Virus record (IMG/VR): IMGVR_UViG_3300034072_000926
Span: 62,001 to 126,000 of that record
DNA length: 64,000 nt
Reading direction: 5' to 3' (one strand)
Within the stretch, counting starts at the first letter, position 1. Each line of letters starts with the position of its first letter. A model generated the notes under the pieces. It did not search any database. It had not been told where the DNA came from and saw only the letters and a program-made list of their open reading frames with translations. Shown here piece by piece: positions 1-53,378 of the stretch. The position numbers and the translations under genes are program-made.

Positions 1-288
1 TTCGGTGGAGAAATATCCTTCAGTGCGAAACGCACCATCACTCTCGCCGCGCCAGAACGACTTGTAGCCAAGCAAGTCAATTGCGATGAGCCGCTTGAGT
101 TCCTCAACCTTGAACCCCTTGCAGAGCTGAGACACTTCGCCCCTGGTCAGATACAAGTCATCAGGAGTTTCTGCCGATAGCTTCTTCATGATCAGCTTCG
201 TGTGGAAAGCCTTGAGGAAATTATAGGCCGGGCTGTCTTCGGTAATGACAGCGTAGCTCTTGCCGTCAATGACTTCGATATCATACAT
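1..288 (-). CDS. hypothetical protein, truncated by window start (MYDIEVIDGKSYAV...GYFSTE)
   Basis: Open frame from ATG at 288 to the window edge, overlapping the stop of the upstream gene; not in ORF track. Confidence 0.6.
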   Translation of the reverse strand, partial: MYDIEVIDGKSYAVITEDSPAYNFLKAFHTKLIMKKLSAETPDDLYLTRGEVSQLCKGFKVEELKRLIAIDLLGYKSFWRGESDGAFRTEGYFSTE

Positions 289-574
289 AAGGTCTTGCCT
301 CACAGATTAGATCGTCGTACCAGGTCAGTTTCGCAAGCACCGCGTCCTTGGGATTCTTGAACGAGATGTTTCGACCGCTTTTCATATCATCGATGCTATA
401 TAGATCAGTGGTATGGTTGTTCAACCATATTGTTTCCTGCATAGACGGCGAACGATTCAGACCCAATTGGGTCTTGAAACGCAGGTTGCGCTTGCGATGA
501 GGATGACGAAACACCTTGAGCTTGATGGCATCCTGGCGAGTCATTTTCTTCACGATGTCACTGAGCTTCTTCAT
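281..574 (-). CDS. small phage protein with C-terminal FKLxW-type motif (KDAVLAKLTW)
   Basis: ORF track; ATGA coupling with neighbour; shared motif. Confidence 0.7.
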   Translation of the reverse strand: MKKLSDIVKKMTRQDAIKLKVFRHPHRKRNLRFKTQLGLNRSPSMQETIWLNNHTTDLYSIDDMKSGRNISFKNPKDAVLAKLTWYDDLICEARPYV

Positions 575-798
575 CTTCCACCAAAGGTCAGCTTGAACAA
601 CATTGCAGTCTTATGATCCTTGAATGTCCAGTCCACCCAACAGTGGGTCTGATCATTACAAGCCTTGAACGAGTAGTCATGCCATACTGACAGACCCTTA
701 CCAAGCATCCAATGAGCACATTCGGGAAAGGCATCAACGACATTACTGCCGATGGGATAGCCGTCCTTGAGCTTAGAGGTCCGAACAGTGACGGTCAT
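571..798 (-). CDS. small phage protein with C-terminal FKLxW-type motif (KTAMLFKLTFGG)
   Basis: ORF track; ATGA overlaps on both sides; motif. Confidence 0.75.
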   Translation of the reverse strand: MTVTVRTSKLKDGYPIGSNVVDAFPECAHWMLGKGLSVWHDYSFKACNDQTHCWVDWTFKDHKTAMLFKLTFGGR

Positions 799-1082
799 TT
801 TCCGCCGAACCGCAACTTGAACAAAGCCGCGAGATCCTTGCTTGGGAAATAGAACTTAGTGACTTCGTATTCACCGTTCTCTGTCGAGCAGGACATATCG
901 AATCCGTGGGCATCGCACCAATCAACAACTTCAGGCCCAACCTTGTAGTTGAATGTGTCTCCATATTTGCCACAGGGAACCTTGATCAGGTACGGACGAA
1001 TATCGAAGACTAGTTCAAACTTTCCTTGCCGCTCCTTTTTAAGATTGGCAAGGAAAGCCTCGACTTGCTCTCTGGAAGCCAT
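795..1082 (-). CDS. small phage protein with C-terminal FKLxW-type motif (DLAALFKLRFGG)
   Basis: Start re-assigned to ATG 1082 (TAATG overlap with the cca stop). Confidence 0.7.
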   Translation of the reverse strand: MASREQVEAFLANLKKERQGKFELVFDIRPYLIKVPCGKYGDTFNYKVGPEVVDWCDAHGFDMSCSTENGEYEVTKFYFPSKDLAALFKLRFGGK

Positions 1083-2236
1083 TATTCGACCTCCAGCAGT
1101 TCTTCCTTGGTCTTCGTCCAGCGACTGAACGTCCAAGCCTGCTTCATCCGATTCAGCTTCTGACCCATTTCCGGACCGGGCTTCATGCCCATATCCAGCA
1201 AGTCCTTACCACGAACCGGGAAGGTCGGGATCTCGAAGTTGCGAGCATAATCGGCCAGCAACGTCTCGCCCTGCACTTCTGCAAAGCTCACGACATGATC
1301 CCGAGGGAACTCGTCCCGAGTCAGCATCACTTCGATCCGCTGTTCGTCCAGGAACACGCCGCGGTTGCGGATCATGTTCCGAACCTTTGCCTCTTCCGGC
1401 GAGCTCATCTTCCAGAACTTGAAGAACTTCTCTTCATCAGTGCTGGCGACCAGCGTAGCCAGTGCGGCCAGCGCATCATCGGCACGGGTCAGTTCAGCGG
1501 GGTTGAAGCGGAAGATGCCCAGTGCCCGATTGACCTGAGTCTTGAAGATCGCGTCCACGATCCGCGTCCGACCCGGCATCTTGGGATCCAGCAGCTTCTG
1601 CATTTCCAGCCAGAACCGCTCAACGCTTACGACGTTCAGCTTGTCCAGAACTTCACCCTCAGCGAAGATATCCAGCGTGTCCTGATCCATCGAAGCATCG
1701 AATCGTGCTGCGAAGCGGAAGTAGCGCAGGATACGCAGGTAGTCCTCTTCAACGCGCTTGCGCGCATCGCCGACGAACCGAACGACCTTGGCTTCCAGAT
1801 CCGCCCGACCATTGAAGTAGTCGAAGACTTCGCCCTTCATGTCCATCGACATTGCGTTGATGGTCAGGTCGCGCCGTTCTGCATCGACTTCGAAGCTGCG
1901 AGTGAATTCCACCGTTGCATGACGACCGTCAGTCTCAGTGTCGATCCGCAGCGTGGTGACTTCGAAGGGTTCGCCATCAACGACCAGCGTAGCCGTGCCG
2001 TGCTGGATACCGGTCGGGATAAAACCGAACTTGTTGATCTCTGCGATGATCTTCATTTCGTCCGGCGTTGCATCGGTTGCGAAGTCGATATCCTTGGGTT
2101 CCACACCCAGCAGCGCATCACGAACACAGCCGCCGACGAACCGGACCTCATGACCCGCCATATCGAAGGCTTTCATCAGCTTCTTCGTCTTCGGGGTCAT
2201 CAGTTTGTCCAGCATGTCGATCTCCTTGTTGTTCAT
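1082..2236 (-). CDS. cca: CCA tRNA nucleotidyltransferase (class II, poly(A) polymerase family)
   Basis: VGGCVRD, DIDFAT, EVTTLR, RRDLTINAM, EDYLRILRYFRF motifs; C-terminal FPVRGKDL..G.KPGPEMG. Confidence 0.93.
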   Translation of the reverse strand: MNNKEIDMLDKLMTPKTKKLMKAFDMAGHEVRFVGGCVRDALLGVEPKDIDFATDATPDEMKIIAEINKFGFIPTGIQHGTATLVVDGEPFEVTTLRIDTETDGRHATVEFTRSFEVDAERRDLTINAMSMDMKGEVFDYFNGRADLEAKVVRFVGDARKRVEEDYLRILRYFRFAARFDASMDQDTLDIFAEGEVLDKLNVVSVERFWLEMQKLLDPKMPGRTRIVDAIFKTQVNRALGIFRFNPAELTRADDALAALATLVASTDEEKFFKFWKMSSPEEAKVRNMIRNRGVFLDEQRIEVMLTRDEFPRDHVVSFAEVQGETLLADYARNFEIPTFPVRGKDLLDMGMKPGPEMGQKLNRMKQAWTFSRWTKTKEELLEVE

Positions 2237-2259
2237 GTAACGCTTCTAGCATGAACAGG

Positions 2260-2505
2260 TTAGGAGTCAACCGATATTATTTCTGTATTCCATGACAATT
2301 TTGCTAACATTGCGGTTTCTTTTGAAACTACTAAATGCCAAACAGCCGGCCCAGGCCACATTTCATGCTGGATTTTAACTCTTTCCAAACCCTTACTTCG
2401 AGAAGCATTTTCAATATCAAATTGCCATTCGGGTTCGTATCTGTCTAACCATTCTAATAATTCTTCAGTTTGGTTCGGCATTGCTTCTATGTAGAGATGG
2501 ATCAT
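2260..2505 (-). CDS. small phage protein with FKLxW-type motif (ETAMLAKLSW)
   Basis: ORF track; ATGA overlap with HNH gene; motif. Confidence 0.65.
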   Translation of the reverse strand: MIHLYIEAMPNQTEELLEWLDRYEPEWQFDIENASRSKGLERVKIQHEMWPGPAVWHLVVSKETAMLAKLSWNTEIISVDS

Positions 2506-3287
2506 ACCAGATCCTTCGGATCTACTGAACTATTTGCGATCTTCGCAAGACGCCGGTCTTCAATGACCTGCCAGCGACGAGCCATTTCAGCACGAACCTC
2601 ATCGACGGCTTGTTGCCATTCAGGCTTTACATAGAGCAAGACTGCGATCTTCCACATCAGCAGATTCTTAGCGTCTTTGCGCTTTTCCTTAACCTTGACC
2701 TTCTTCTCTTGAAGCCGGGCAGCTTTCATCTTGCAGTAGACGCGCCATGCCTCTGGATTCTGTCGCAGTTTCAGGAACTTGTTGAACTTCATGTCGCCGC
2801 GCAGGTTGTTGCACCCGCTACAGGACATCACAACATTGCTCAGGTGATCCGTGCCGCCTTTGCCTTGACACACGATATGCTCAAGGGTTGCTCGACGATT
2901 ATTGGAAATCGGAGTATCACCGGGAAGCCAGGATTTCTGACCACAGAAGTAGCAGAGGCCGCCTTGAAGATGAAACATCTTAGTGGTCTTGCGACGACGA
3001 GCATTGGTGAACTTTGTGTACCACTCCTCTTTCGCTTCAGGAGTCGTCCACTTTTTACGGACGGCGCGTCCGATTAGTTGAGTGTAGCTGATCCCACCCG
3101 AGAGCTTTCCAGGCTTTTTGCTTTGCACGACGGCAAAGTCGAACGGGAAAGACAATGGGCCAGAAGATCCAATAGTTCCAGTTGATGGAACCGCGGCGCT
3201 TGGGGCTGATTCCACACTTGACGACGTATGGGATGAGCAAGATGAGACACAGGACGAATACGACGTTTTTGCCTCTGTCGCTACCAC
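2502..3287 (-). CDS. HNH endonuclease (start uncertain; GTG 3128 is an alternative)
   Basis: CYFCG...TLEHIV..GKGGTD..SNVVMSCSGCNNLRG zinc-finger HNH motif. Confidence 0.85.
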   Translation of the reverse strand: MVATEAKTSYSSCVSSCSSHTSSSVESAPSAAVPSTGTIGSSGPLSFPFDFAVVQSKKPGKLSGGISYTQLIGRAVRKKWTTPEAKEEWYTKFTNARRRKTTKMFHLQGGLCYFCGQKSWLPGDTPISNNRRATLEHIVCQGKGGTDHLSNVVMSCSGCNNLRGDMKFNKFLKLRQNPEAWRVYCKMKAARLQEKKVKVKEKRKDAKNLLMWKIAVLLYVKPEWQQAVDEVRAEMARRWQVIEDRRLAKIANSSVDPKDLV

Positions 3288-3303
3288 CCGAAAACACTCC
3301 CAT
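3055..3303 (-). CDS. small putative membrane protein overlapping the 5' part of the HNH ORF
   Basis: GGAGGT Shine-Dalgarno just upstream of ATG 3303; two hydrophobic segments; C-ending codon bias. Confidence 0.5.
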   Translation of the reverse strand: MGVFSGGSDRGKNVVFVLCLILLIPYVVKCGISPKRRGSINWNYWIFWPIVFPVRLCRRAKQKAWKALGWDQLHSTNRTRRP

Positions 3304-3330
3304 AACTACCTCCGTTGCTCACCGCTTACG

Positions 3331-3552
3331 TTAGAGTCCGCCCCATGTCAACTTGAATAGTGACGCGATGTTAGGGTTGGCGAACATAAAATGGTGCTTG
3401 CCTTTGTGCGGTCCACAGTAGAGATAATCATGACGAATATTGAGGCCTTGCTCGTCAACCCAATCGATCAGGTCGGATATAGGGTGACTATCGCTGACTA
3501 GGATTTTGACCATATTTTCTAGTGGAATCAATACCGCCATTAGAAACCCCAA
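3331..3552 (-). CDS. small phage protein with FKLxW-type motif (NIASLFKLTWGG)
   Basis: ORF track; motif. Confidence 0.7.
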   Translation of the reverse strand: MGFLMAVLIPLENMVKILVSDSHPISDLIDWVDEQGLNIRHDYLYCGPHKGKHHFMFANPNIASLFKLTWGGL

Positions 3553-4235
3553 TTCTCACGTTCGTTCTCTTCCCTGAGGAGACGTTCGAGTTCATCATCC
3601 TCAAAATCGTCATCATCCTCGTTCAGACCTTCATGATCTGCGGTCTTACTGATCCACTTCTCTGCATCGAAGTCGTTGATCTCAAAGTCACGATACAGAC
3701 CAACAACCCTGACATGATAGAATGTCGAATTCTCGAAACTCTCATAGGTGACCTGCTGGCAATAGAGGCCGAACGCTGCCAAACCCTGAGTCAGAGCAAT
3801 CGAATCCATCATCTTCATGCCGACCCTAACATAAAAGTTGATGGTCAGATTGAATCCCGGTCCGTTGACCTCTTCTTCCGAATAGCCGTTGTGTCCATAT
3901 GTGGTCGAGATGTTATCGTCAGCCATAACGCTTACGATCTCGGCCTTATAGAAATTGAGACCTGCTCGGTCCTTATCCAGTATGTTGAACGGACAGGCTT
4001 GGACCTCGAATGGCTTTTGAAGCCATGCCTCAAGTTCATCCAGACTATGGAAGTTCTGAACGTCTTGGCGAATAGGCAAATATTGCCTGATTGCAAGACG
4101 CAATGACCGATAATCCTGAGCACGTTTGCCCCAGGACCCATTGATCAGAACAGTCATGTTGTCGAGCAGGCTATTGTAATAGTTCCGCCACATTCGTAGC
4201 GGATACTGCTCGTTTGTGACTAGGCTGCGTTTCAT
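3540..4235 (-). CDS. hypothetical protein with acidic tail
   Basis: 231-aa ORF with ATGA coupling to upstream gene. Confidence 0.7.
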   Translation of the reverse strand: MKRSLVTNEQYPLRMWRNYYNSLLDNMTVLINGSWGKRAQDYRSLRLAIRQYLPIRQDVQNFHSLDELEAWLQKPFEVQACPFNILDKDRAGLNFYKAEIVSVMADDNISTTYGHNGYSEEEVNGPGFNLTINFYVRVGMKMMDSIALTQGLAAFGLYCQQVTYESFENSTFYHVRVVGLYRDFEINDFDAEKWISKTADHEGLNEDDDDFEDDELERLLREENERENWGF

Positions 4236-5356
4236 CGCACTTCCTTGATCCGATTCATTAACGTGGACTTCTTGCCCTTATATTCGTCATGCTTCTTGAC
4301 AGTGCCCCTGATCCGAACACGCTTACCTTCCTTGCCACGGAATACTGGCTTAGTGGCGAACCACTTGTAGACATTGCCAGAGTGATCATGGAAGCTATGG
4401 AGGAAGCATGTATCGAGAGTCCGAACATTGTCCACGATGACTTCCACTTCAAGCTTCTGATCGATCACGCCTTGGAATTCACTGCTCAGGGGTCCAGTGC
4501 GATTGCGCGAATAATACACGCCTACGATCGAGGCCGCGATGCCAATGCTCCGTTCCTCGAGTGCTTCGCTGTTGGCGACTACATGGCAGTTGTGCTCATA
4601 GTCAGAGAGTTCGCCCTCGAGTCCCCGTGCCCAGTCAAGAGCAGCGTTTGCGAGGTTCCGTGCTGCGCTGGAGGCCAGAGGAAGCTGGCGGCTCATTGAG
4701 CCCCATACGCGATCTGAGGTGCTCTGATATCCAGTCTCACGAGCAACCCGGCGACTCACGAAGCCATTTTCCAGGATGCTTGATGCACAGAGGGTCATGA
4801 AGTCCTCAGTATCGATCCAGCGATAATCCCGAAGCGAAGAGGAGTCGAAATTGCGAACACCACGTGCAAATTCGCCGATACTGGCGACCAGTTCAGCCAT
4901 CTTGGCCCATTTGTCTGCGTCTCCGTGACCGAGGAAGTCCTTGAGGCACGAACTGCCAACTTGCTTGAAGCCATGATCTTCATGGAAGACCACGAACGTA
5001 TCACGCCGACGACGCTTGTGACCGCAATGGTCACAGGATGGATCACTGTGGCGATATTCCTCTGGGAGATCGCGAAGACCAGTGGTGCGGACGATATTGC
5101 CAGTCTCATTGCCGTGGTCGATTCGTGCCACAAACTCCCAGCCGTCCAGCTTGGGTTCGGGGAAGGCAACGAAGACCTCGTTGATACGATGTCCGTAGAA
5201 TTTGGATTGTTTGTTCTCTTCCTTGTGGAAGCCCACAACAGTGAGGAAGAGCCGCTCGCCGGTCAGACGCTTTGCGCGCTTGGCGAGAGTCTCGAGCTTG
5301 GCCTTAAACCATTCGAAGCCGTCTGCGGGAATTTCGTAAGTTTTGCCTTCAGCCAC
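4232..5356 (-). CDS. conserved phage protein with Cys/His metal-binding motif and probable C-terminal OB fold
   Basis: CDHCGHKRRR..QVGSSCLKDFLG; C-terminal IRGTVKKHDEYKGKKSTLMNR; AGGAG RBS and sigma70-like promoter upstream. Confidence 0.7.
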   Translation of the reverse strand: MAEGKTYEIPADGFEWFKAKLETLAKRAKRLTGERLFLTVVGFHKEENKQSKFYGHRINEVFVAFPEPKLDGWEFVARIDHGNETGNIVRTTGLRDLPEEYRHSDPSCDHCGHKRRRRDTFVVFHEDHGFKQVGSSCLKDFLGHGDADKWAKMAELVASIGEFARGVRNFDSSSLRDYRWIDTEDFMTLCASSILENGFVSRRVARETGYQSTSDRVWGSMSRQLPLASSAARNLANAALDWARGLEGELSDYEHNCHVVANSEALEERSIGIAASIVGVYYSRNRTGPLSSEFQGVIDQKLEVEVIVDNVRTLDTCFLHSFHDHSGNVYKWFATKPVFRGKEGKRVRIRGTVKKHDEYKGKKSTLMNRIKEVR

Positions 5357-5423
5357 GTTCGATCTCCTGTTGTGTTATTTCGTATCATAACATCAAACAG
5401 GATTGAGTCAACCAGAAAAGGTG

Positions 5424-5456
5424 AAGCCCCTATCAGTTCTACCAATAGGGGCTTTC
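5424..5456 (-). terminator. intrinsic terminator hairpin
   Basis: AAGCCCCTAT...ATAGGGGCTT inverted repeat after the stop at 5460. Confidence 0.6.
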
Positions 5457-5459
5457 TAA

Positions 5460-6413
5460 TTAGTCGTTAGGCGCTAATGCGTTCACATTGAATGTAGCGA
5501 CAACCGCAGGAGTTCCGTCCTTTGGAGTAGCAGTTGCGGTGATCTTATAGAGACCTTCCTTATAGCTAGGATGGATAAAGCTCACACGCTGGATGTTCTG
5601 AAGGATATCACCCTTTTCGCTCACATAGGAGTCTGTGATCGTGCCATACGGGCTATTGATCACAATAGTATCATTGCGATTTACTAGGAAGAAGTTACCG
5701 ATCGCGATCCCATCCTTCTCAAAAGCAATTGAGATATCATAGAGATCGGTCAGCTTATGATTGCCTGGATTCTGCTTTAGACCAAAAGCAAAGCGCAGGT
5801 TCCAATCTTCCTTGATCTGATTGCCAGAAGCATTCACTGCCTTAGACAATAGCTGGAAGGTATAGGTTCCGCTCACTGAGTCAGGATTGCCCGAAGACGA
5901 ACCCCTGAAGCCTGGACCAACTGCAACCTCAATACGACCGTCAGTTGCAACCTGCATCTTGTTGATAGGATTAGTATTACCAAGAAGCATGTAGGAAGTG
6001 CTTGGCTTGCGGAACTGGGTTCCAAGCGAGCTATTTGCAGTTGAGGTAGGAGCCACAACAGTTGCGGCCTCGATTGGGTTCTCGACAGTTTCGATCGTGA
6101 AGGCAGAGTTACCCGTTGCATTCCAGCTTGCCTGTTCGCCAGTGCTAGTAGTCAGAACTCGACCCTTGAAGCCGTCGACCTGAACGATCTGACCAACGCT
6201 ATTCATAACATTGACGCTCATTTCACCAGGGGCTAGATCTTCAGCGGGCTTTGCGACAAGCTTGGACCTCACTTCTTCACCATCGACGTTGATGATGAAT
6301 TCACGGGTTGCAGTCTGCTTTACGAGGTAACCCTCAACTTCGCTGCCGTCCACAATAGTCTTGCAACGGATCGCGTCTGGTCCAAAGAACTTCTTACTTA
6401 CAGGACGTCCCAT
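5460..6413 (-). CDS. putative virion protein, paralogous N-terminal domain to 6468-7139
   Basis: Starts MGRPVSKKFFG with AGGAG RBS; GYLVKQT motif shared with neighbour. Confidence 0.7.
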   Translation of the reverse strand: MGRPVSKKFFGPDAIRCKTIVDGSEVEGYLVKQTATREFIINVDGEEVRSKLVAKPAEDLAPGEMSVNVMNSVGQIVQVDGFKGRVLTTSTGEQASWNATGNSAFTIETVENPIEAATVVAPTSTANSSLGTQFRKPSTSYMLLGNTNPINKMQVATDGRIEVAVGPGFRGSSSGNPDSVSGTYTFQLLSKAVNASGNQIKEDWNLRFAFGLKQNPGNHKLTDLYDISIAFEKDGIAIGNFFLVNRNDTIVINSPYGTITDSYVSEKGDILQNIQRVSFIHPSYKEGLYKITATATPKDGTPAVVATFNVNALAPND

Positions 6414-6434
6414 ATCATTCTCCTTAATCAAAGA

Positions 6435-6462: not shown

Positions 6463-6467
6463 GTCTA

Positions 6468-7139: not shown

Positions 7140-7188
7140 GTGAATCTCCTAAATAGGCGTGGGTTTTACCTATTTAGTGGAAAATGGG

Positions 7189-14894: not shown

Positions 14895-15086
14895 TCAGTC
14901 CAGCAAATCTTCATCAAACTGAAGTCGGAAACGAAAAGCCTCATCAATTCCCGAGAAGCTGAGTTCGAGAGAGTCGTCATCTGCGTTAACGATTGCGCTC
15001 TGATCGACATGCTCATCCGCAAGCCACTTTACAACCTTATCCTTAGATGCGGCATCCACCCACAACGTCCATGTGCTTGCGACCAT
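14895..15086 (-). CDS. small protein with FKLxW-type motif (DEAFRFRLQF)
   Basis: GAGGT RBS; motif. Confidence 0.65.
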   Translation of the reverse strand: MVASTWTLWVDAASKDKVVKWLADEHVDQSAIVNADDDSLELSFSGIDEAFRFRLQFDEDLLD

Positions 15087-43885: not shown

Positions 43886-44251
43886 GTGTTGCCGCAACTA
43901 GAAAACTTCCCATTCCTGACCCTTGGTCGATACCTCGATCAAGAATATCTTGGCATCGTGGGCAACTCAGATAATCAGATCACCTCGATCTATATCTATA
44001 ACTCCTTGCCAAATGAGGAGGCCAAGAAACTGTTCTTGCAGCTTGGCGATGAATGGTGGTGGGAAACCAATCGTCAAATTCCTATCAATGTCGTGCTGAA
44101 GGATCGCTGGGCTGTTTTCCGTCCATACCTGAAGACATTCATCACAAGCGACTTCGAGATCCTAAAGGGTCCATCGGTCAGCTTGGATGATGTTATGGTC
44201 AAACGTGTTCGTCGCCGTCAGATTCAGCTCGTCCGTAAACAGGAAGACTAA
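43886..44251 (+). CDS. conserved hypothetical phage protein
   Basis: FPFLT..Y...EY.GI, FL.LG.EWWWETNR.IPIN; late promoter at 43847-43852. Confidence 0.75.
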   Translation: MLPQLENFPFLTLGRYLDQEYLGIVGNSDNQITSIYIYNSLPNEEAKKLFLQLGDEWWWETNRQIPINVVLKDRWAVFRPYLKTFITSDFEILKGPSVSLDDVMVKRVRRRQIQLVRKQED

Positions 44252-44634
44252 AAGGATAGCCTGAACCTCAGTGCATCTATGAGGTTCTCAAATGTCCAGA
44301 TAAACGTCAACTGACTGACGTGTTCCATTCTGATAGAGAAGTCCCACTTGCCTAAGGCATTGTCTTGGATCCAATCTGTCATCTCATCAAAATATTTGTA
44401 GACAGTGCTATAACTCTTGAAGTCGTGCCTTAGGACGACTTTGTGATCTAGCTCACTTCCGTAATAGTTGACAAATCGTCCAGAGTGAAGATCAAGCTCG
44501 TCATATCTGAGCTTTGACATCTTCACACTATAGAGTATCTGTTCATTCGGATAGACAGAAGATATCACATCAACTGTCAACCACAAGCCGTCATGCTGGC
44601 TTGCGATTACAGTCTCATACCTCCGGTTCTGCAT
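44248..44634 (-). CDS. protein with FKLxW-type tail (IDALRFRLSF)
   Basis: W..DNA.GKW...F.N..DA..FRL.F. Confidence 0.6.
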   Translation of the reverse strand: MQNRRYETVIASQHDGLWLTVDVISSVYPNEQILYSVKMSKLRYDELDLHSGRFVNYYGSELDHKVVLRHDFKSYSTVYKYFDEMTDWIQDNALGKWDFSIRMEHVSQLTFIWTFENLIDALRFRLSF

Positions 44635-45214
44635 TGACTTTGTCGAGAAGCAGGTTGAGTTGGACAACAATCACATGCGCGTAGGAAATAGCGTGTGCCT
44701 TCTTGAACGCATAGTCATCATCAGCTAGTGGATCGACTTGCCAAATCTCTCTTTCGAGTTCCTCAAAAGGCAATCCCATGAGGTGTTGCTTACCTGGACG
44801 GATTACCGCGAGAACCATCGCGAGTTCAAGAATCGATTTCGGAGCATAAGCCGCTGTTAGTTCTGCCCATCGTCCTAGCTGGAAGAGTTGCCCAACTATG
44901 TCTTCATCAGTAAGGAGTTCCCACATGGGTTCCCTAGAGATCAGATCATCAAGATGCGCTTCGTCTCGAACATCCTTGTAGACGTTGAGATTCAGGAAGT
45001 CGATTTTGAAATAGCCTCGAGATTCTGCTTCCTCGTAAGGTATGCCTGAGAACCCCGTAAGTGGATCCTGAGGGATCGCTTGGAAATAGACACCCACGTT
45101 ATGTCGGCGCAATTCTCCGTTCTGTACCATGCTCGCAGGGATACAGAGAAGCCCCTCTAGTGCTTTGTCTCGATTCTGGAAGTCAATGTCAACGTCGGGA
45201 ACGAACTTACCCAT
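44615..45214 (-). CDS. minimal DNA polymerase III alpha (DnaE)-like protein
   Basis: PDVDIDF, H..GV, FKIDFL, LFQL, L.M.LAVIRPG, YAFKKAHAISYA. Confidence 0.85.
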   Translation of the reverse strand: MGKFVPDVDIDFQNRDKALEGLLCIPASMVQNGELRRHNVGVYFQAIPQDPLTGFSGIPYEEAESRGYFKIDFLNLNVYKDVRDEAHLDDLISREPMWELLTDEDIVGQLFQLGRWAELTAAYAPKSILELAMVLAVIRPGKQHLMGLPFEELEREIWQVDPLADDDYAFKKAHAISYAHVIVVQLNLLLDKVNAEPEV

Positions 45215-45486
45215 TAGAGGAACCTTAGCTTAAAGAGAACGGCGAGATCAGGGCGGTCTCGAAAGTCTACTCCACCCTTCTCGGGGAGACCTACTAGGTT
45301 TTGCTCGGCTACAAAGAAATCAACCTTATGGAGATCGAACCATTCCTTGAGTTCCTCACTCTTAGGATGGCCTTCTAGATAGTTGAAATCAAAATACAAA
45401 GAATCTTCACGCTGACTAAATTCAGCCAATTCTTCTTCTGCGATTTCAGCTAGGATGCGAGTTAATTTGTGAGAGTTTCTACCCAT
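45214..45486 (-). CDS. small protein with FKLxW-type tail (DLAVLFKLRFL)
   Basis: TAATG coupling to mini-DnaE; motif. Confidence 0.7.
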   Translation of the reverse strand: MGRNSHKLTRILAEIAEEELAEFSQREDSLYFDFNYLEGHPKSEELKEWFDLHKVDFFVAEQNLVGLPEKGGVDFRDRPDLAVLFKLRFL

Positions 45487-47301: not shown

Positions 47302-47854
47302 TGGTTTTCTTAAACTCTTCGACAAGAGGTTTGATTTCAACATCCGATAGGGCCATGCCCTTGAGCAAGTCCTTCAGAGTATCAACTGTGAACTTGCTCT
47401 TGAAGATCTTGAGCTCTTCATCACTCAACTGAGGATGAATCTGTAGGAAGACCTGATCTAGCTTCGAGACCGACTTCTTACGACCTGCCATCGCGATCCA
47501 GCCATGCTTATAGGGCTGGCCTGATCCAGCAGCACACATCAGTCGCCATAGTAGTTCAGGATGCTTAGAGATTTCCCAAAAGCCAACGTTCACAAACGAG
47601 TTGACCATGAGGATGTTCTCTGCCGCAGCATCAGATGTCACTGAGGCATAACCTGGCGGATCATAGGAGTTCGGGTTCTGGATCACACTCTGCCACTTCA
47701 TAGCAACGAGTGGAGAGAAGGTCTTTGCTAGTTCTTCAGGTTGCTGTTCGAGCCAGTCGAACACCTTATAATCCGCATAGAGCATCTCATCCTTAATGTC
47801 CAGGCTTGGCTTCTTCTCACCAGCTGGCTTCTTTGTTGTTTTCTTCGTAGCCAT
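47294..47854 (-). CDS. putative clamp-loader small subunit-like protein
   Basis: FSP...KW, N..VN..FW...KHPEL.W.L pattern; replication cluster context. Confidence 0.5.
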   Translation of the reverse strand: MATKKTTKKPAGEKKPSLDIKDEMLYADYKVFDWLEQQPEELAKTFSPLVAMKWQSVIQNPNSYDPPGYASVTSDAAAENILMVNSFVNVGFWEISKHPELLWRLMCAAGSGQPYKHGWIAMAGRKKSVSKLDQVFLQIHPQLSDEELKIFKSKFTVDTLKDLLKGMALSDVEIKPLVEEFKKTNG

Positions 47855-48132
47855 TATTGTCCTGACCAGGTTAGTTTGAACATCAACGCTTCTTCTTTGG
47901 TTTCGAAGCAGACAAGAGTTAATCCTGCCTTATGCTTACTTTCCCATTTATCCTCACCTGGTGAGACAACAATGAGGGGAAGTCGTTTCAACATGCCAAG
48001 TTCGCCTTCTTGGCTGACTATGAAACTTTTGCCCTTTACATTCTCCTTGAACCACGTCAGAAGTTCACCAGATACAATTGCCTCGTGATTATAGTCCCAC
48101 CATACCGTCCAGGCGTTTGGAATTTCACTCAT
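47854..48132 (-). CDS. small protein with FKLxW motif (EEALMFKLTWSGQ)
   Basis: Tandem paralog of 48129-48383 (VWWD, W..EN..G, FKLTW.GQ). Confidence 0.75.
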   Translation of the reverse strand: MSEIPNAWTVWWDYNHEAIVSGELLTWFKENVKGKSFIVSQEGELGMLKRLPLIVVSPGEDKWESKHKAGLTLVCFETKEEALMFKLTWSGQ

Positions 48133-48383
48133 TGTCCTACCCAGGTTAGCTTAAACATCATTGCATCTTTTGGGCACTCGAACATGCAAAGCATGATCTC
48201 CTTACCTATGTTATCTTCCTTTACAGTTGACAAACTATCAACTTGATACAAACTCAGACTACCACCGGACAGGAAATAGTAATGACCTTCCAGATTGTCC
48301 AAGCACCATTGATTAATTGGTTCATCAGTAGAGGAATGATCCCACCAAACGCAATAGGGTTGAGCAATTTTTCGCATACCCAA
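48129..48383 (-). CDS. small protein with FKLxW motif (KDAMMFKLTWVGQ)
   Basis: Tandem paralog; TTGACA promoter-like element near 48410. Confidence 0.75.
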   Translation of the reverse strand: MGMRKIAQPYCVWWDHSSTDEPINQWCLDNLEGHYYFLSGGSLSLYQVDSLSTVKEDNIGKEIMLCMFECPKDAMMFKLTWVGQ

Positions 48384-48413
48384 TCCTATTGCATCTTGGT
48401 GGTTTATGTCAAT

Positions 48414-48701
48414 TTATCGGACGCTCTTGCTGCCGATATAATCGAGGGCTGTGGCACGCCAATGATGTGTCCATCGCCTAACATCCTGTGGTCTAAAATC
48501 CCTGTTGACCAACTGGATATCTACCCTCCAGAAGTAGTCCCGAATCTGTCGATGCCATTCCCCGAGGCTTCCCGGTTCAAACTGCTTCTCGACAAAAACA
48601 CTTGCTACCTCTTTCATCATCATCTCGCTGATTTCAGCAACGAGTTCGGCGCGACTAGGTGGTTCTAGATCCACGCCAGGTAGAAGAATTAATTTTCCCA
48701 T
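48414..48701 (-). CDS. hypothetical protein
   Basis: TAATG coupled. Confidence 0.55.
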   Translation of the reverse strand: MGKLILLPGVDLEPPSRAELVAEISEMMMKEVASVFVEKQFEPGSLGEWHRQIRDYFWRVDIQLVNRDFRPQDVRRWTHHWRATALDYIGSKSVR

Positions 48702-49201
48702 TACACCAGATTAGTAATATCTAGAGCTTCTGGAATCTTGTTCGTATCCTTGACAAAGAAGCAACACTGAGGTGTTGGCGAATCATCAAGAGGCACGGAC
48801 AGAAGATGACCATACTTCAGCTTAGGGAAATACCACTTTACGTCAGGGAATACGTTCATGATCTCAATGTCATGGAAGTGTGGCATATATCCACTAATCG
48901 GGTTGATACTAAAGGCTTCAAAGGGACGGTCGTTGATCTGTTTCAGACTAATGATCTCCAGATCACCAGTATCCTTGTCACCAATTACAATGCTCCAATC
49001 CATTGGCATCTGGAGCCTATACTTTCCGAGTCGTAGATCAACTGCCGGGCTGTTGAAAGACTCGAGGAACAGCAATGGGATGAAAATATAGTCAATGTTC
49101 TGCTGGTCACTATAATCTAGGACGCAATAGCGGATATCATCAACTTCATCCGGAATGTTGTTCATTTCAAACGTGGTATTATCGGTTGTAAGGATTCTCA
49201 T
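48701..49201 (-). CDS. conserved hypothetical protein downstream of UvsW
   Basis: MRILT, FIPL.FLESFNSPA, WYFPKLK motifs; ATGA coupled. Confidence 0.75.
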   Translation of the reverse strand: MRILTTDNTTFEMNNIPDEVDDIRYCVLDYSDQQNIDYIFIPLLFLESFNSPAVDLRLGKYRLQMPMDWSIVIGDKDTGDLEIISLKQINDRPFEAFSINPISGYMPHFHDIEIMNVFPDVKWYFPKLKYGHLLSVPLDDSPTPQCCFFVKDTNKIPEALDITNLV

Positions 49202-50771: not shown

Positions 50772-50831
50772 CTGTCTATAATCTGGAGAAACGGTTCACC
50801 GCTCTCCTATTTACCGCCAAAATCGGCGGAT

Positions 50832-52352
50832 TCACGTAAGTTGTTGAAATAATTCTTGTTCAAAGGTGGACTTGATGACCGTCAAGACTAACCTGGTTCC
50901 AGAAGCAGTTGCAGCCTCAGATATTGCCTGATATTCTTCTTTGTCGAATGGCAATTCAGGCATGAACAGATATGCTGCCTTATTGAGCAAATCGGGATAG
51001 GTTATGAGATCTTCCATCGTGACAATGAGGTTGGAAACAGGTTTAACATCATAAACCCTCTTCCAAATCACTCCAGGCATTACAAGACCCGTGAACCCCA
51101 TAACATCCATTTCAGGTTCATCACCGATGGTCCGAATTGCTGTTCCGAACTGAAGGCGCAATGCACGGACGAGATCAGGGTTTTCAGCAAGGAATAAAGA
51201 GCGAGTTAGTCTATTCGCGATGCTACCATGAACGCCTTTGAGGTGCTGTCCTTTTAGGGTTGCCCACTGTGGCGTTCTAAGGGCCCCTATAAGCCCCGCA
51301 GAAGCTCTGTCACCGCCTATAGCGCTCTGCACTATCTCAGGTAGCTTTCGTCCCTCTGACTGCTCTAGGTCCCGTTCACGGGTGTGTAAACGGATAAGTC
51401 CAGAGCTTTTATTCTGCTTCGCCAATAATGTAGGTAAACTGGTCTCATAGAAGGTCAGTGGACCGGTAGTCGTTGCATCATTCAACAAGTCACTAGACAC
51501 GCCAACGATATTGAGAAGCTTGATATAGTCCAAATTGACATAGCTTCTCTTTGCCAAATATTCTTCGGCAGCTTTCGTCTCAATGCTATTTAGAATAGTT
51601 GAGATAGTGGTAGAAGGCCAGAGCATTTTATTGATGATCTCGGACAGGAATTGACTTGCTTGACTCCCCGGCAAAAGGAGCGAAGACATAATGTCTCGAC
51701 CAGACGATAGTGGCAGATGGTTGATGTTCTGAAGGAATAGCGGGCAAGGGACTTCGTTGAATAGAGCAGCAACCTGCGTTGACCACTTATAGGGAAGCGC
51801 CCCCGGTCCTTCTAGCTCTTCCACAAATGTCCTATCGACGGTGACATTGGCAAAGAAGTCGTTCCAGATCAATCCACTGTAATTGGTAATGAAGACATCG
51901 GCCGTGAAATCAGCATCTTCAGTGAACTGAATGCCATCTGGATACTTGACCGCCGACGAATGATAGCGAGGATTGCCGAAGATAGAAATCTTCGCATCCG
52001 GCATCACTGCGCGAAAGAGATCAACCCAATCCGTATAGCTCTTAGTCTGAGCCAGTACCAAGACTTTCGAAGATGGCTTCAGCCATAGATCTGCCATCGC
52101 GACATGTCGGGCTTCTTCAGATTTGGAACAGAGAACCATTGCCCTACCGTTCCAATCACGAATATGCTGGATTGTCGAAACTGCATTGTTGGGAAGATCG
52201 AATGGGAAGTCAAAGAGATCTTCCTTTGAAACGATATCCTGCATGGCTAGGTCGACTAGCTTCTCATCAAAACTGATCTTGTTCAGAGTCGAGTAATTGA
52301 TCAAGCGACGAGCCATACCAGGCGTCGCATTCAGAGTTTTTACGTCAAACAT
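50832..52352 (-). CDS. degenerate SNF2-like helicase-fold protein
   Basis: KVLVLA.......W...F, VFITNY.GL; VEEL in place of DEAH; no Walker A. Confidence 0.5.
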   Translation of the reverse strand: MFDVKTLNATPGMARRLINYSTLNKISFDEKLVDLAMQDIVSKEDLFDFPFDLPNNAVSTIQHIRDWNGRAMVLCSKSEEARHVAMADLWLKPSSKVLVLAQTKSYTDWVDLFRAVMPDAKISIFGNPRYHSSAVKYPDGIQFTEDADFTADVFITNYSGLIWNDFFANVTVDRTFVEELEGPGALPYKWSTQVAALFNEVPCPLFLQNINHLPLSSGRDIMSSLLLPGSQASQFLSEIINKMLWPSTTISTILNSIETKAAEEYLAKRSYVNLDYIKLLNIVGVSSDLLNDATTTGPLTFYETSLPTLLAKQNKSSGLIRLHTRERDLEQSEGRKLPEIVQSAIGGDRASAGLIGALRTPQWATLKGQHLKGVHGSIANRLTRSLFLAENPDLVRALRLQFGTAIRTIGDEPEMDVMGFTGLVMPGVIWKRVYDVKPVSNLIVTMEDLITYPDLLNKAAYLFMPELPFDKEEYQAISEAATASGTRLVLTVIKSTFEQELFQQLT

Positions 52353-53014
52353 CAGCTATCCAAAACCTTTATGCAATTGAGCCAATTGTCCAACATATCA
52401 TCGTCCTTTACCGTGACCTTGATCTTATCATCGACCACAGTTGCTTCACTGTCCTGCCCTTCGGCATTGGACACTTCCATGAAATACTGAGTGACCGTAT
52501 CATCAAATGCAAACTTGTGTCGCTTGATAAGATTCATCACAGTCTTCCAGTTGCCCGAATTGACATCAACAATCCATAGCTTGTGGTCACGATCAAACAT
52601 AGGATAGCGTTCGACGAAATGATTAGTCGAACCACACTTCTTCAGATCGCTTACGATGTTCTGACTGTATTTGCAGCGAAAGACCAGCTTGTTATTCCCG
52701 GCCCATCGAACCTCTCTCGCGAGGGGTTCGGATTGGTAAGGAGGCCTACGATATTTCGGAGCAGCAATGAGGATATCAATATCATTCTCGACCAAACCAA
52801 CTGCAATGAGGTGTGGCTTATAGCGAGCGATCAGACGCATCACTACATCACCTTGAGACGTCGAGATCGCGCTGTTGTCGAAGACTCGGCGAACAACATC
52901 ATTGATGAATTGGAGGTCCCAAGTGTCCTTGATCTGATATGTGATCGTGCCTATTGTTCGCGGCTTATCACAAATCTTTTTTAACTTCTCAAGACCGTCC
53001 TCGACTGTAAGCAT
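52352..53014 (-). CDS. HARP-like domain protein
   Basis: F.CKYSQNIV..LK...FDRDHKLWIV. Confidence 0.55.
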   Translation of the reverse strand: MLTVEDGLEKLKKICDKPRTIGTITYQIKDTWDLQFINDVVRRVFDNSAISTSQGDVVMRLIARYKPHLIAVGLVENDIDILIAAPKYRRPPYQSEPLAREVRWAGNNKLVFRCKYSQNIVSDLKKCGSTNHFVERYPMFDRDHKLWIVDVNSGNWKTVMNLIKRHKFAFDDTVTQYFMEVSNAEGQDSEATVVDDKIKVTVKDDDMLDNWLNCIKVLDS

Positions 53015-53378
53015 TGTCCGCCTTTACCAAATCCGTAACCGATATACGGACTAGCATAGCATCATCGGCAGATGCAAAATTCATATAGAGTCGATTTCGA
53101 TAATCTGTTGGACTGAATGACTCTTCCTCTGGTTCTCCGAGCGCATCCTCACCTAGAAACCATACCCAGTGTTCCTTAACGAGCGGACCGATCAAAGACA
53201 ACTTACGATGCAGGATTTTCCTGAAGGTCCCAGTGTCAAACATTAACACTGAGCCAAGATCTGTCTTGTAGGTATATGGGAATGAGAAATGTGAGAGCGA
53301 CCGAACCCGTTGTGCAGAGTAAGGCATATTCGAGCAGATTTCGCTCGTTAATCCAGTCGGTCCAGAACAGTAATCCAT
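52989..53378 (-). CDS. hypothetical protein with FKLxW-like tail (FASADDAMLVRISV)
   Basis: ORF track; TTGACA near 53410. Confidence 0.55.
   Translation of the reverse strand: MDYCSGPTGLTSEICSNMPYSAQRVRSLSHFSFPYTYKTDLGSVLMFDTGTFRKILHRKLSLIGPLVKEHWVWFLGEDALGEPEEESFSPTDYRNRLYMNFASADDAMLVRISVTDLVKADNAYSRGRS

What the first reader, a model, noticed from the sequence alone, without database searches (positions are those of the whole stretch)
281..53378. Dispersed family of about 13 small proteins sharing a C-terminal F-x(3-5)-A-x-x-F-K-L-x-W/F motif
Seen: otherwise divergent ORFs end in or near the same signature. They are 281 (FKNPKDAVLAKLTW), 571 (FKDHKTAMLFKLTFGG), 795 (FPSKDLAALFKLRFGG), 2260 (SKETAMLAKLSW), 3331 (FANPNIASLFKLTWGG), 7189 (GRIMLMKLSI), 14121 (DQVMLAKLSF), 14895 (FSGIDEAFRFRLQF), 44248 (FENLIDALRFRLSF), 45214 (FRDRPDLAVLFKLRF), 47854 (FETKEEALMFKLTW), 48129 (FECPKDAMMFKLTW) and 52989 (FASADDAMLVRISV). 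Many also carry an upstream 'W...' helix (EVVDWCD, LLEWLD, LIDWVD, VVKWLA, LTWFKEN, NQWCLDN). They occur in tandem clusters, are inserted between core replication genes, and several follow sigma70-like promoters. Inference: either a small alpha/beta domain expanded as a diversified effector repertoire, or a shared C-terminal docking or targeting helix that attaches variable N-terminal cargo to one common partner. The motif also appears on longer unrelated proteins (7189, 14121), which favours a portable tag.
Basis: partly seen in the sequence, partly recalled or inferred. Interest (0 to 1): 0.78.

Follow-up and report, generated by a model that had tools for sequence, protein, structure and literature searches.

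The report
Expanded small-protein family in jumbo phage
The shared C-terminal signature is real, but it is the core helix of a complete small domain that defines an undescribed protein family, which has multiplied to dozens of divergent copies (59 in the cultured Sinorhizobium phage Phosso, roughly 9% of its genes) in a group of about 400-470 kb phages; what the family does is unknown.

Summary
The full motif F-x(4-6)-A-x-x-[FAVM][KR][LI]-x-[WFVI] occurs 11 times in the six-frame ORFs, always within 20 residues of a stop, against 0.43 expected from shuffles. ORFs 7189 and 14121 are not members. 14121 belongs to a separate conserved 173-aa family, and 7189 is an ORFan.

The motif is not a portable tag. 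It is helix alpha2 of a roughly 60-70 residue beta-beta-alpha-beta-beta-alpha domain (AlphaFold pLDDT 81). Its other hallmark is an invariant Trp in helix alpha1, 19-55 residues upstream of the motif's Phe. Third codon positions vary freely at the motif, so the constraint acts on the protein.

The family has no Pfam, PHROG or NCBIfam model and no convincing structural relative. The window lies on a 465-kb metagenomic jumbo-phage contig with at least 29 copies in about 87 kb sampled. A related 416-kb contig has at least 53 domain copies in about 50 kb. The cultured Sinorhizobium phage Phosso has 59 copies, with 0 in decoys.

Paralogs are only about 25-35% identical, differ widely in charge, have no conserved catalytic-type residues, and vary in presence between related phages. 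The most likely role is a diversified set of non-enzymatic binding modules for host takeover or counter-defence. That role is inferred, not shown.

The parts
795..1082 (-). Family member, 95 aa, ends ...ALFKLRFGGK. Its ATG overlaps the stop of the CCA-adding enzyme gene (1082-2236) by 1 nt. First gene of a three-gene chain.
   Evidence: Independent whole-domain HMM E 1.7e-10. External C-terminal HMM E 3.3e-7. Ortholog P0008. Start and stop context.
571..798 (-). Family member, 75 aa, ends ...AMLFKLTFGGR. It has a 4-nt ATGA overlap with 795-1082.
   Evidence: HMM E 3.2e-9 and 4e-11. Identical to database protein P0003.
281..574 (-). Family member, 97 aa, with motif ...FKNPKDAVLAKLTW followed by 12 more residues. 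It has a 4-nt overlap with 571-798.
   Evidence: HMM E 8.7e-11 and 3.7e-7.
2260..2505 (-). Family member, 81 aa, with motif ...SKETAMLAKLSW plus 9 residues. It has a 4-nt overlap with the HNH endonuclease gene 2502-3287.
   Evidence: HMM E 0.003 and 6.6e-9 with the A3 profile, which contains this protein (P0005) among its rows and is therefore not independent evidence. Weak with the C-terminal profile alone (E 0.34). Neighbour annotated as HNH.
3331..3540 (-). Family member, 69 aa (P0006), ends ...ASLFKLTWGGL. This is the copy that was modelled.
   Evidence: AlphaFold pLDDT 81.4: strands 4-7, 10-16, 39-45 and 48-53, helices 21-30 and 56-66. HMM E 5.5e-9.
14895..15086 (-). Divergent member, 63 aa, with motif ...FSGIDEAFRFRLQF plus 6 residues and Trp helix KVVKWLADEH.
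   Evidence: External C-terminal HMM E 0.002. Fully independent whole-domain HMM only E 1.5. Relatives P0039 and P0137 carry the same FRFR[LM]QF variant.
44248..44634 (-). Family member, 128 aa by analogy with P0002 (an internal ATG at 44520 would give 90 aa). It ends ...ALRFRLSF at the stop. The domain is the C-terminal ~90 aa, and the gene lies directly downstream of the DNA polymerase fragment gene 44615-45214.
   Evidence: HMM E 2.2e-8. P0002 is a near-identical 128-aa protein on a 389-kb contig. Neighbour is phrog_11778 DNA polymerase.
45214..45486 (-). Family member, 90 aa, ends ...AVLFKLRFL. It lies directly upstream of the DNA polymerase fragment gene. It is absent at this position in the related locus L003; L020 does not reach this junction.
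   Evidence: HMM E 2.3e-6. Synteny comparison. Phosso gene 436 holds the same position upstream of the DnaE-like gene 437.
47854..48132 (-). Family member, 92 aa (P0001), ends ...ALMFKLTWSGQ. It forms a tandem pair with 48129-48377. No counterpart exists in the related loci L020, L003 and L034.
   Evidence: HMM E 2.3e-10. Synteny.
48129..48377 (-). Family member, 82 aa, ends ...AMMFKLTWVGQ. Orthologs are kept at this position in three related contigs at 46-52% identity, while most flanking genes are clearly more conserved.
   Evidence: HMM E 1.1e-13. AlphaFold pLDDT 70 with a disordered loop at residues 40-57. Synteny and dN.
52989..53243 (-). Borderline member, 84 aa from the ATG at 53243 (129 aa if it starts at 53378). 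Motif ...FASADDAMLVRISV followed by 15 residues.
   Evidence: External C-terminal HMM E 0.0098. Whole-domain HMMs E 0.04. Leave-one-out test failed. L003 has a homolog at 35% identity.

Best explanation
What is shown. The ORFs are paralogs of one undescribed family of small, soluble proteins built on a single domain of about 60-70 residues with the order beta-beta-alpha-beta-beta-alpha. The 'C-terminal signature' is helix alpha2. It follows strand beta3 (the conserved Phe), starts with an N/D-x-x-D cap, and presents Ala, Leu, Phe, Leu and Trp, presumably to the hydrophobic core. The invariant Trp of helix alpha1 always accompanies it. The family has expanded to dozens of very divergent copies per genome in Phosso-like jumbo phages, whose only cultured host is an alphaproteobacterium. 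Copies are often chained by overlapping stop and start codons.

What is inferred. Almost all conserved positions are hydrophobic or helix-capping. The beta2-beta3 region varies in length, net charge ranges from acidic to basic, and no catalytic-type residues are conserved. The proteins therefore most likely act as non-enzymatic binding modules: a constant scaffold with variable surfaces. They would be made inside the infected cell, each engaging a different host or phage macromolecule for host takeover or counter-defence.

Confidence is about 0.9 for the domain-family part and about 0.35 for the binder/counter-defence role.
For: Enrichment of the motif at C-termini. Independent profiles recover the members. 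A profile search of 1.84 billion representatives gives 182 hits at E<=0.001, mostly covering profile positions about 18-70 and nearly all 60-130 aa long. The invariant Trp and Ala and the >90% conserved F53, F62, K63 and L64 are mapped on the model's secondary structure. The Trp-to-Phe spacing ranges from 19 to 55 residues, and the long insert in the 48129 protein is the low-confidence loop of its model. Synonymous positions are free at 132 motif sites, with all 4 Ala and all 6 Leu codons used. There are no Pfam, PHROG or NCBIfam hits. Copy numbers: 22 domain hits in 7.2 kb of L028, at least 53 domain copies in about 50 kb sampled of one 416-kb contig, and 59 in the complete Phosso genome with 0 decoy hits. 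Paralogs within a genome are about 25-35% identical, and some have orthologs at 44-72% in other contigs. Domain pI spans 4.6-9.5 between the 10th and 90th percentiles, with no hydrophobic run of 15 or more residues. Presence varies between related phages, and the member compared has the highest dN of eight genes compared. Longer copies carry no known fused domains.
Against: No experiment or informative homolog bears on function. Outside the C-terminal 14 residues, the window copies alone are too divergent for leave-one-out detection, so the whole-domain claim rests on external homologs and on predicted structures. The coordinates of those models could not be inspected for contacts. dS is saturated, so positive selection could not be tested. 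Promoter-like sites are not enriched. The metatranscriptome contigs that overlap members do not prove transcription. Clustering near tRNA and translation genes in Phosso would also fit an RNA-related role.
Confidence: 0.6

Rival explanations
1. Portable C-terminal docking or targeting helix. A short amphipathic helix is attached to unrelated N-terminal cargo and brings all of it to one common partner, for example a protease, chaperone or compartment.
For: After removing the last ~14 residues, leave-one-out profiles of the window copies no longer recognise one another. N-terminal extensions differ greatly in length and sequence. K63 and T65 of the helix are conserved polar residues that could be a contact site. 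Phosso is annotated with ClpP, Clp ATPases and ClpS, which read terminal signals (the connection is my inference).
Against: The motif always comes with the invariant Trp helix 19-55 residues upstream of the Phe, and database matches span about 50 profile positions. AlphaFold places the helix inside one compact domain. The two 'unrelated longer proteins' are not members. No fusions to known domains were found. The residues after the Trp vary in length and sequence, which is unlike a terminal degron.
Confidence: 0.12
2. Small RNA- or tRNA-binding domain. The family would be an RRM/KH/ACT-like module that acts on tRNA or mRNA, multiplied alongside the phage's large tRNA and translation gene set.
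For: The best structural alignments are to RRM, KH, ACT, eIF1 and DCoH-type two-layer alpha/beta sandwiches (Z 5-6.5; Foldseek lists uL23). Window copies 795/571/281 directly follow the CCA-adding enzyme, and four Phosso copies follow its nucleotidyl transferase. Seventeen Phosso copies lie in the first 21 kb, interspersed with tRNA genes. Others lie among aminoacyl-tRNA synthetase, RNA ligase and peptidyl-tRNA hydrolase genes.
Against: The Z-scores are below the tool's stated noise level of 7-8, and all Foldseek E-values are above 0.05. Domain pI ranges from 4.6 to 9.5 and about half the copies are acidic. No conserved basic or aromatic surface patch exists beyond one Lys. Many copies lie in replication or unannotated regions.
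Confidence: 0.12
3. Nucleotide-level element. The similarity would reflect a conserved DNA or RNA signal at gene ends (ribosome-binding site, terminator or recombination site) rather than selection on protein.
For: The optional Gly-Gly after the Trp is G-rich DNA placed just upstream of the next gene's ATG. Copies with a GG tail have a downstream start within -10..+12 nt in 31 of 37 cases, against 78 of 145 for other tails (Fisher p 7e-4). The upstream contexts in the window read GGTGGAAG-ATG, GGCGGAAA-ATG and GGTAGGACA-ATG.
Against: Within the core motif, third codon positions are near maximal entropy while the amino acids are fixed: Ala uses 4 codons, Leu 6, Thr 4, and Lys uses AAA and AAG about equally. 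The motif is conserved in copies with no closely following gene. This reading can explain at most the GG tail.
Confidence: 0.03
4. Chance resemblance among unrelated short ORFs.
For: The 5-residue core alone is barely enriched overall: 20 observed against 14 expected. This is how 7189 and 14121 came to be included.
Against: There are 11 full-motif hits against 0.43 expected, all C-terminal. Reversed-sequence decoys score nothing in the window or in Phosso. Hundreds of homologs exist elsewhere.
Confidence: 0.01

Closest known systems
Lineage-specific expansion of a small domain in a jumbo phage, e.g. the ~35-copy zinc ribbon of Bacillus phage G (Iyer et al. 2021, PMC7824862, read)
   Same: One very small domain is multiplied to tens of divergent copies within a single giant phage genome. 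Its function is unknown and it is suggested to be a binding module.
   Different: The fold is different: an alpha/beta sandwich without metal ligands rather than a zinc ribbon. The copy number is higher (59 in Phosso). The family is shared by a whole group of phages and a few prophages rather than confined to one phage. The passages of that survey returned by my keyword search do not mention it.
Multigene families of large eukaryotic DNA viruses (African swine fever virus MGF110/360/505, poxvirus Bcl-2-like families). From my own knowledge, not tested here.
   Same: These are arrays of highly divergent paralogs with a conserved scaffold. Copy number varies between related viruses, and their roles lie in host interaction and immune evasion.
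   Different: The hosts and folds are unrelated. For the phage family no phenotype is known, and the analogy is conceptual only.
Tandem arrays of polymorphic-toxin immunity proteins (SUKH and Imm families) and clustered anti-defence genes of phages. From my own knowledge.
   Same: These are small, soluble, non-enzymatic alpha/beta proteins in strings of non-identical paralogs. They evolve fast and are gained and lost between relatives.
   Different: No sequence or profile link exists. The single Imm51 hit at E 0.012 among 59 scanned sequences is at chance level. No toxin or defence partner has been identified.
Two-layer alpha/beta sandwich folds (ACT, RRM, KH, DCoH/PCD, the C-terminal domain of the MoaD-related protein 1v8c)
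   Same: They share a four-stranded antiparallel sheet covered on one side by two helices, with 55-65 residues aligning at 2.1-3.5 A.
   Different: Z is at most 6.5, below the aligner's noise level. Sequence identity is 3-11%. The strand order starts with a hairpin instead of beta-alpha-beta, and none of these families' sequence motifs is present.
LAGLIDADG homing-endonuclease half-domain (I-DmoI, I-AniI, bI3 maturase)
   Same: Foldseek repeatedly lists them. The beta-beta-alpha-beta-beta-alpha order equals a LAGLIDADG half-domain without its first helix. Like free-standing endonuclease genes, the copies sit between core genes.
   Different: E-values are 0.17-0.97 and TM 0.4-0.5. The defining N-terminal LAGLIDADG helix with its catalytic acidic residue is absent, and the proteins are about 70 aa rather than 170 or more.

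Membership tests
The family itself (profile of 122 relatives, alignment A3; informally 'W...FKLTW domain') | C-terminal helix motif F-x(4-6)-[DE]-A-[ML]-L-F-K-L-T-W or a close variant, within 20 residues of the stop | tested here: met
   Met by 11 ORFs. 7189 and 14121 have only ML-x-KLS-[IF] and lack the invariant Ala and the Phe.
The family itself | Invariant Trp in helix alpha1 (E-[VLI]-x-[DE]-W-[LC]-x-[ED]-N), 19-55 residues before the conserved Phe | tested here: met
   The Trp column is invariant in A1, A2 and A3, with spacing statistics. In 52989 the context is atypical (HWVWF).
The family itself | Significant match to a profile built without any window sequence | tested here: met
   Eight ORFs score E<1e-5 and 2260 scores E 0.003. 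52989 (E 0.04) and 14895 (E 1.5) are borderline. The best decoy scores E 2.4. With the external C-terminal profile, 10 of 11 score E<0.01.
The family itself | Predicted beta-beta-alpha-beta-beta-alpha domain with the motif as the last helix | tested here: met
   Two AlphaFold models: pLDDT 70 for the 48129 protein, whose first strand was not resolved into a hairpin, and 81 for the 3331 protein. The other members were not modelled.
Any curated family in Pfam-A, PHROGs v4 or NCBIfam 20 | Score above the family threshold | tested here: not met
   No family is shared by more than one of 59 scanned members, and all E-values are >=0.0026. PDB sequence profile search: best E 0.31.
Portable short C-terminal tag, degron or docking motif | The same motif on proteins whose remaining parts are unrelated in fold or carry other known domains | tested here: not met
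   The motif always co-occurs with the Trp helix. The candidate carriers 7189 and 14121 were rejected. The longer copies that were scanned show no Pfam domain.
Ubiquitin-like / ThiS-MoaD proteins (considered because many copies end ...WGG-x) | Beta-grasp fold and Gly-Gly at, or processed to, the extreme C-terminus | tested here: not met
   Among the 150 listed representatives the commonest endings leave one residue (46) or three residues (37, typically G-G-x) after the Trp. In alignment A3, Gly fills the first position after the Trp in 47% of rows; the second position is occupied in 58% of rows and is Gly in 73% of those. The model is a helix-packed sandwich, not a beta-grasp. The 1v8c match is to its non-MoaD C-terminal domain, residues 85-165.
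LAGLIDADG homing endonucleases | N-terminal LAGLIDADG helix carrying a catalytic Asp/Glu, and a ~90-100 residue half-domain that dimerises or is duplicated | tested here: not met
   No helix precedes strand 1 in the models. Foldseek E 0.17-0.97.
RRM / KH / ACT-type nucleic-acid or ligand-binding domains | Fold match well above background, plus family motifs (RNP1/RNP2, GXXG, ligand-binding Gly loop) | tested here: inconclusive
   Z 5-6.5 is below the stated noise level of 7-8. No Pfam match was found. Binding itself is not testable here.
Viral lineage-specific multigene family | Many divergent paralogs per genome, partly in tandem arrays, with copy number varying between relatives | tested here: met
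   59 copies in Phosso. 22 domain hits in 7.2 kb of L028. Paralog identity is about 25-35%. 47854 is absent from L020, L003 and L034, and 45214 is absent at its position in L003.
Anti-defence or host-takeover proteins | Demonstrated inhibition of, or binding to, a host protein, and early expression | not testable with these tools
   Only indirect evidence: small size, fast divergence, gain and loss, and location outside structural modules.

The most novel reading that the evidence does not exclude
The family is a phage counterpart of the immune-evasion multigene families of large eukaryotic viruses. A constant beta-beta-alpha-beta-beta-alpha scaffold, held together by the Trp helix and the FKLTW helix, would display a hypervariable beta2-beta3 hairpin and variable termini. 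Each of the ~60 copies per genome would neutralise a different host defence or housekeeping protein. This would make it the largest binder repertoire known in a phage, and it could be studied directly in Phosso on Sinorhizobium meliloti.
Probability: 0.3. Interest if true: 0.8.

Novelty: new member of a known kind. Interest (0 to 1): 0.55.

Why it matters
Jumbo phages are full of unannotated small genes. Here roughly 9% of the genes of a cultured 469-kb phage, and comparable shares of related metagenomic phages, collapse into one recognisable domain family that no curated library holds. A profile for it would annotate hundreds of 'hypothetical proteins' at once. The family's size, divergence and turnover also mark it as a prime candidate for the genes that decide how these phages deal with their hosts. 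Because Phosso and its non-pathogenic host are in culture, the question can be tested directly.

Tried and rejected
1. A megablast of window 1-8000 against GenBank phages found nothing.

2. A tblastn of single members against GenBank phages gave nothing for the 47854 protein or P0015. Only P0022 revealed Phosso. A Phosso member used as query again found only Phosso.

It was replaced by a degenerate DNA pattern for DAMLFKLTW.

4. Fold searches in PDB, AFDB clusters, BFVD and the ESM Atlas, plus VIA-align wide, gave no match above noise. The afdb_swissprot search was not accepted.

5. The ESM Atlas feature search returned only unnamed viral clusters.

6. dN/dS failed because dS is saturated.

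7. Context in the Rhizobium prophage was uninformative: nine of ten neighbouring proteins had no PHROG match and the tenth matched a family of unknown function.

8. Pfam scans of longer family proteins, looking for fused domains, found none.

9. Literature searches for the motif, for jumbo-phage paralog families and for Phosso, and reads of the Atu_ph07 and AP-J-162 papers, found no description of the family.

10. The Ubl (C-terminal GG) and LAGLIDADG ideas were considered and rejected (see the membership tests).

Full report
**What is in the window.** Nearly all genes lie on the minus strand. The window includes a CCA-adding enzyme, an HNH endonuclease, a DnaB-like helicase, a primase, a DNA polymerase fragment, a second helicase, and UvsY-like and UvsX-like proteins. 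There is no nucleotide match in GenBank phages. A 771-aa protein matches Sinorhizobium phage Phosso (469 kb), and more weakly Agrobacterium phage Atu_ph07 and PA5oct. Locus L029, from IMG/VR contig 3300034072_000926 (465,259 bp), overlaps window 1-522 at 100% identity. The window protein P0006 is also recorded on a 465,259-bp contig. The window is therefore a piece of that uncultured jumbo phage. Gene order mirrors Phosso at about 310-370 kb.

**Check of the observation.** All 13 ORFs exist as described.
- The full motif F-x(4-6)-A-x-x-[FAVM][KR][LI]-x-[WFVI] occurs 11 times in 1095 six-frame ORFs. All 11 are on the minus strand and within 20 residues of a stop. The shuffle expectation is 0.43 +/- 0.67, with a maximum of 3.
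- The 5-residue core alone is barely enriched (20 versus 14). This explains how two false members entered the list.
- A C-terminal profile built only from non-window relatives ranks the 11 ORFs as the 11 best hits of the window. It does not report 7189 or 14121 even at E 1000.
- A whole-domain profile built from 196 copies in other loci and in Phosso, with no window sequence, finds eight ORFs at E<1e-5. It scores 2260 at 0.003, 52989 at 0.04 and 14895 at 1.5. The best decoy scores 2.4.
- 14895 carries the full motif and the Trp helix, and it has relatives with the same FRFR[LM]QF variant. I count it as a divergent member and 52989 as borderline.

**The two longer proteins.** 14121 has 34 homologs of about 173 aa at 45-100% identity. 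All end in their own conserved ...VRVGKP-x-SAMI-x-DKGTVDQVMLAKL-x-x-F. A profile-profile comparison with the family gives probability 0.6%. 7189 (more likely 7189-7629, 146 aa) has a single near-identical relative and no family signal.

**Tag or domain?** Within the window alone the signal is concentrated at the end. Leave-one-out profiles recognise 10 of 11 members, but none convincingly once the last ~14 residues are removed. External data settle the matter.
- A profile search of 1.84 billion representative proteins returns 182 hits at E<=0.001. Nearly all are 60-130 aa, and the matches mostly run from about profile position 18 to 70, that is, from the Trp helix to the end.
- In an alignment of 122 members the Trp of helix alpha1 and the Ala of the motif are invariant. 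F53, F62, K63 and L64 exceed 90% conservation. Helix alpha1 has its own pattern, E-[VLI]-x-[DE]-W-[LC]-x-[ED]-N.
- AlphaFold with this alignment gives a compact model (pLDDT 81.4). It has strands 4-7 and 10-16, helix 21-30, strands 39-45 and 48-53, and helix 56-66. A second member gives the same helix-strand order (its first strand not resolved into a hairpin), with a disordered insert between strands.
- The conserved positions are the hydrophobic residues of beta3, alpha1 and alpha2, plus an N/D-x-x-D helix cap. The Trp-to-Phe distance varies from 19 to 55 residues.
- Longer proteins contain two or three copies of the domain or unannotated extensions. No known domain is fused.

**Protein-level or DNA-level conservation?** At 132 non-redundant motif sites the amino acids are fixed while third codon positions are almost random. 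Ala uses four codons, Leu six and Thr four, and Lys uses AAA and AAG about equally. Selection therefore acts on the protein. One exception concerns the optional Gly-Gly after the Trp. Copies with this tail are followed by a gene start within -10..+12 nt in 31 of 37 cases, against 78 of 145 for other tails (p 7e-4), usually as an ATGA overlap. In the window the GG codons form GGTGGA-, GGCGGA- and GGTAGGA-type sequences just upstream of the next ATG. The 'GG' may therefore partly serve as a ribosome-binding site for translational coupling. This is an inference.

**Distribution and size of the family.**
- A degenerate DNA pattern for DAMLFKLTW finds 36 loci in IMG/VR. About two-thirds lie on contigs of 104-465 kb, often several per contig. 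It also finds two alphaproteobacterial genomes, Rhizobium sp. 2MFCol3.1 and Novosphingobium guangzhouense. The Rhizobium copy lies in a 33-kb predicted prophage; the Novosphingobium locus was not examined for one.
- Scanning these loci shows dense arrays. There are 22 domain hits in 7.2 kb (L028), 16 in 7.3 kb (L021), and at least 53 domain copies in about 50 kb sampled from one 416-kb contig.
- The window's own genome has 10 more copies on the opposite strand 6.7-11.2 kb beyond the window's left end (L029). Eight more lie in two other sampled pieces. The total is at least 29 in about 87 kb.
- The only GenBank phage found with the family is Sinorhizobium phage Phosso. I fetched its whole genome. 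It has 59 ORFs at E<0.01 (40 at E<1e-4) and none among reversed decoys. That is roughly 9% of its ~665 annotated genes, and the copies whose annotation rows I checked are labelled hypothetical.
- Some positions are shared with the window. Copies sit directly after the nucleotidyl transferase and directly before a small DnaE-like fragment.

**Evolution.** Copies within one genome are only about 25-35% identical, and several have orthologs at 44-72% identity in other contigs. The expansion is therefore old and the copies are individually retained. In three related contigs the ortholog of 48129 keeps its place at 46-52% identity, whereas most neighbouring genes are clearly better conserved: 59-99% in L020, 43-87% in L003 and 53-89% in L034. 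Its dN of 0.40 against L020 is the highest of eight genes compared (0.03-0.35). 47854 has no counterpart in any of the three, and 45214 has none at the one junction that could be examined (L003). dS is saturated, so the type of selection cannot be stated.

**Comparison with known families.** There is no Pfam, PHROG or NCBIfam model and no PDB relative by sequence. Fold searches give only weak, generic matches.
- Foldseek's best E is 0.19 in PDB, 0.06 in AFDB clusters and 0.056 in BFVD. The top AFDB and BFVD hits are uncharacterised proteins, the BFVD ones from phages.
- The ESM Atlas's nearest clusters are unnamed viral ones, at TM 0.76-0.79.
- VIA-align's best Z is 6.5, to ACT, RRM, KH and DCoH-type sandwiches, below its noise level.
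- LAGLIDADG half-domains recur in the lists, but the defining first helix is missing.
- A ubiquitin-like reading prompted by the GG tail fails on both fold and tail position.

Conceptually the closest precedent is the ~35-copy zinc-ribbon expansion of phage G described by Iyer et al. 2021 (PMC7824862). Multigene families of large eukaryotic viruses are a further analogy, from my own knowledge. The Atu_ph07 and AP-J-162 papers do not mention such a family, and no paper on Phosso is in the library.

**How it most likely works.**
- Shown: this is a single-domain family with a conserved hydrophobic core and variable surfaces. It has no transmembrane-length hydrophobic run (15 or more residues), pI from 4.6 to 9.5, and no conserved Cys, His or Ser or other catalytic-type set. 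The genes are embedded in non-structural regions and often translationally coupled.
- Inferred: the proteins are intracellular, non-enzymatic binding modules whose variable hairpin and termini give each copy its own target. The most plausible purpose is host takeover or counter-defence.
- The main rivals are a common docking face and an RNA- or tRNA-related role suggested by the neighbourhood of tRNA and translation genes. Neither is excluded.

**Other evidence.**
- Expression evidence is weak. Wastewater metatranscriptome contigs at >=99% identity overlap members at 45242-45692, 47704-48078 and 47982-48145, and a further contig (48353-48515) covers the first codons and upstream region of the 48129 gene. 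However, DNA carry-over cannot be excluded.
- Sigma70-like sites are not enriched.
- Near-identical phage DNA, with all the family genes of the 44-49 kb segment, is present in two further DNA runs.

**Verdict.** The favoured 'tag' interpretation is wrong and the 'expanded small domain' interpretation is right. The family is undescribed and unusually large, and it can be studied experimentally in Phosso. Its function remains an inference.

Noticed in passing
L029:1664-6242 (+), i.e. about 6.7-11.2 kb to the left of window position 1: A further array of 10 family genes lies on the opposite strand, on the same 465-kb contig just outside the window. The cluster at the window's left end (795/571/281) therefore sits within about 7-12 kb of a larger, oppositely oriented array of the same family.
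   Followed up: partly
window 571-577, 795-801, 48129-48135 and family arrays in L001-L036 and Phosso: The optional Gly-Gly after the motif's Trp gives G-rich DNA just upstream of the next gene's ATG (ATGA overlaps). GG-tailed copies are coupled to a downstream start far more often than others: 31/37 versus 78/145. In 21 other cases a candidate downstream ATG is formed by the Thr-Trp codons themselves (ACA-TGG).
   Followed up: partly
window 14121-14639 (-): This is a conserved single-copy protein of about 173 aa found on many jumbo-phage contigs (315-958 kb). It has its own strongly conserved C-terminus ...VRVGKP-x-SAMI-x-DKGTVDQVMLAKL-x-x-F. Some homologs carry a precomputed Pfam PF23835 label, which my scan did not reproduce. 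Its function is unknown.
   Followed up: partly
window 44615-45214 (-); Phosso genes 138 and 437: A stand-alone protein of about 190 aa matches only a DNA polymerase family (phrog_11778, annotated DnaE-like in Phosso). It is present twice in Phosso, and each copy is preceded by family members. It looks like a conserved polymerase fragment or accessory subunit.
   Followed up: no
window 15912-16697 (+) and 2502-3287 (-): There are two probable free-standing endonuclease genes. The first is a plus-strand ORF in a minus-strand region whose sequence reads like a GIY-YIG motif (my reading, not scanned). The second is an HNH endonuclease lying between two family members (scanned).
   Followed up: partly
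window 45494 and 45994: There is strain variation in other sequencing runs. One base is missing at 45494, just upstream of the 45214 member's start, in three runs. An 18-nt insertion lies behind 45994, inside gene 45869-46660, whose product ends in collagen-like G-x-x repeats.
   Followed up: no
window 44000-49000: DNA at >=99% identity to this phage occurs in runs labelled as single organisms (coded A and B), in an indoor metagenome, and in fragments in wastewater metatranscriptomes. The single-organism runs could point to the host or to contamination.
   Followed up: partly
window 8757-12490 (-): By position, genes 8757-9962 and 10739-12490 correspond to the pair annotated in Phosso as a toxic anion resistance (TelA-like) protein and an SPFH-domain protein. 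This is an unusual membrane-stress gene set for a phage. The window proteins themselves were not scanned.
   Followed up: no
Phosso PV764938.1 1-21000 and 417000-469473: Phosso carries very large tRNA arrays, including an annotated tRNA-Pyl(cta), interleaved with small hypothetical genes. Seventeen family copies lie in the first 21 kb, but only two in the 417-469 kb tRNA region.
   Followed up: partly
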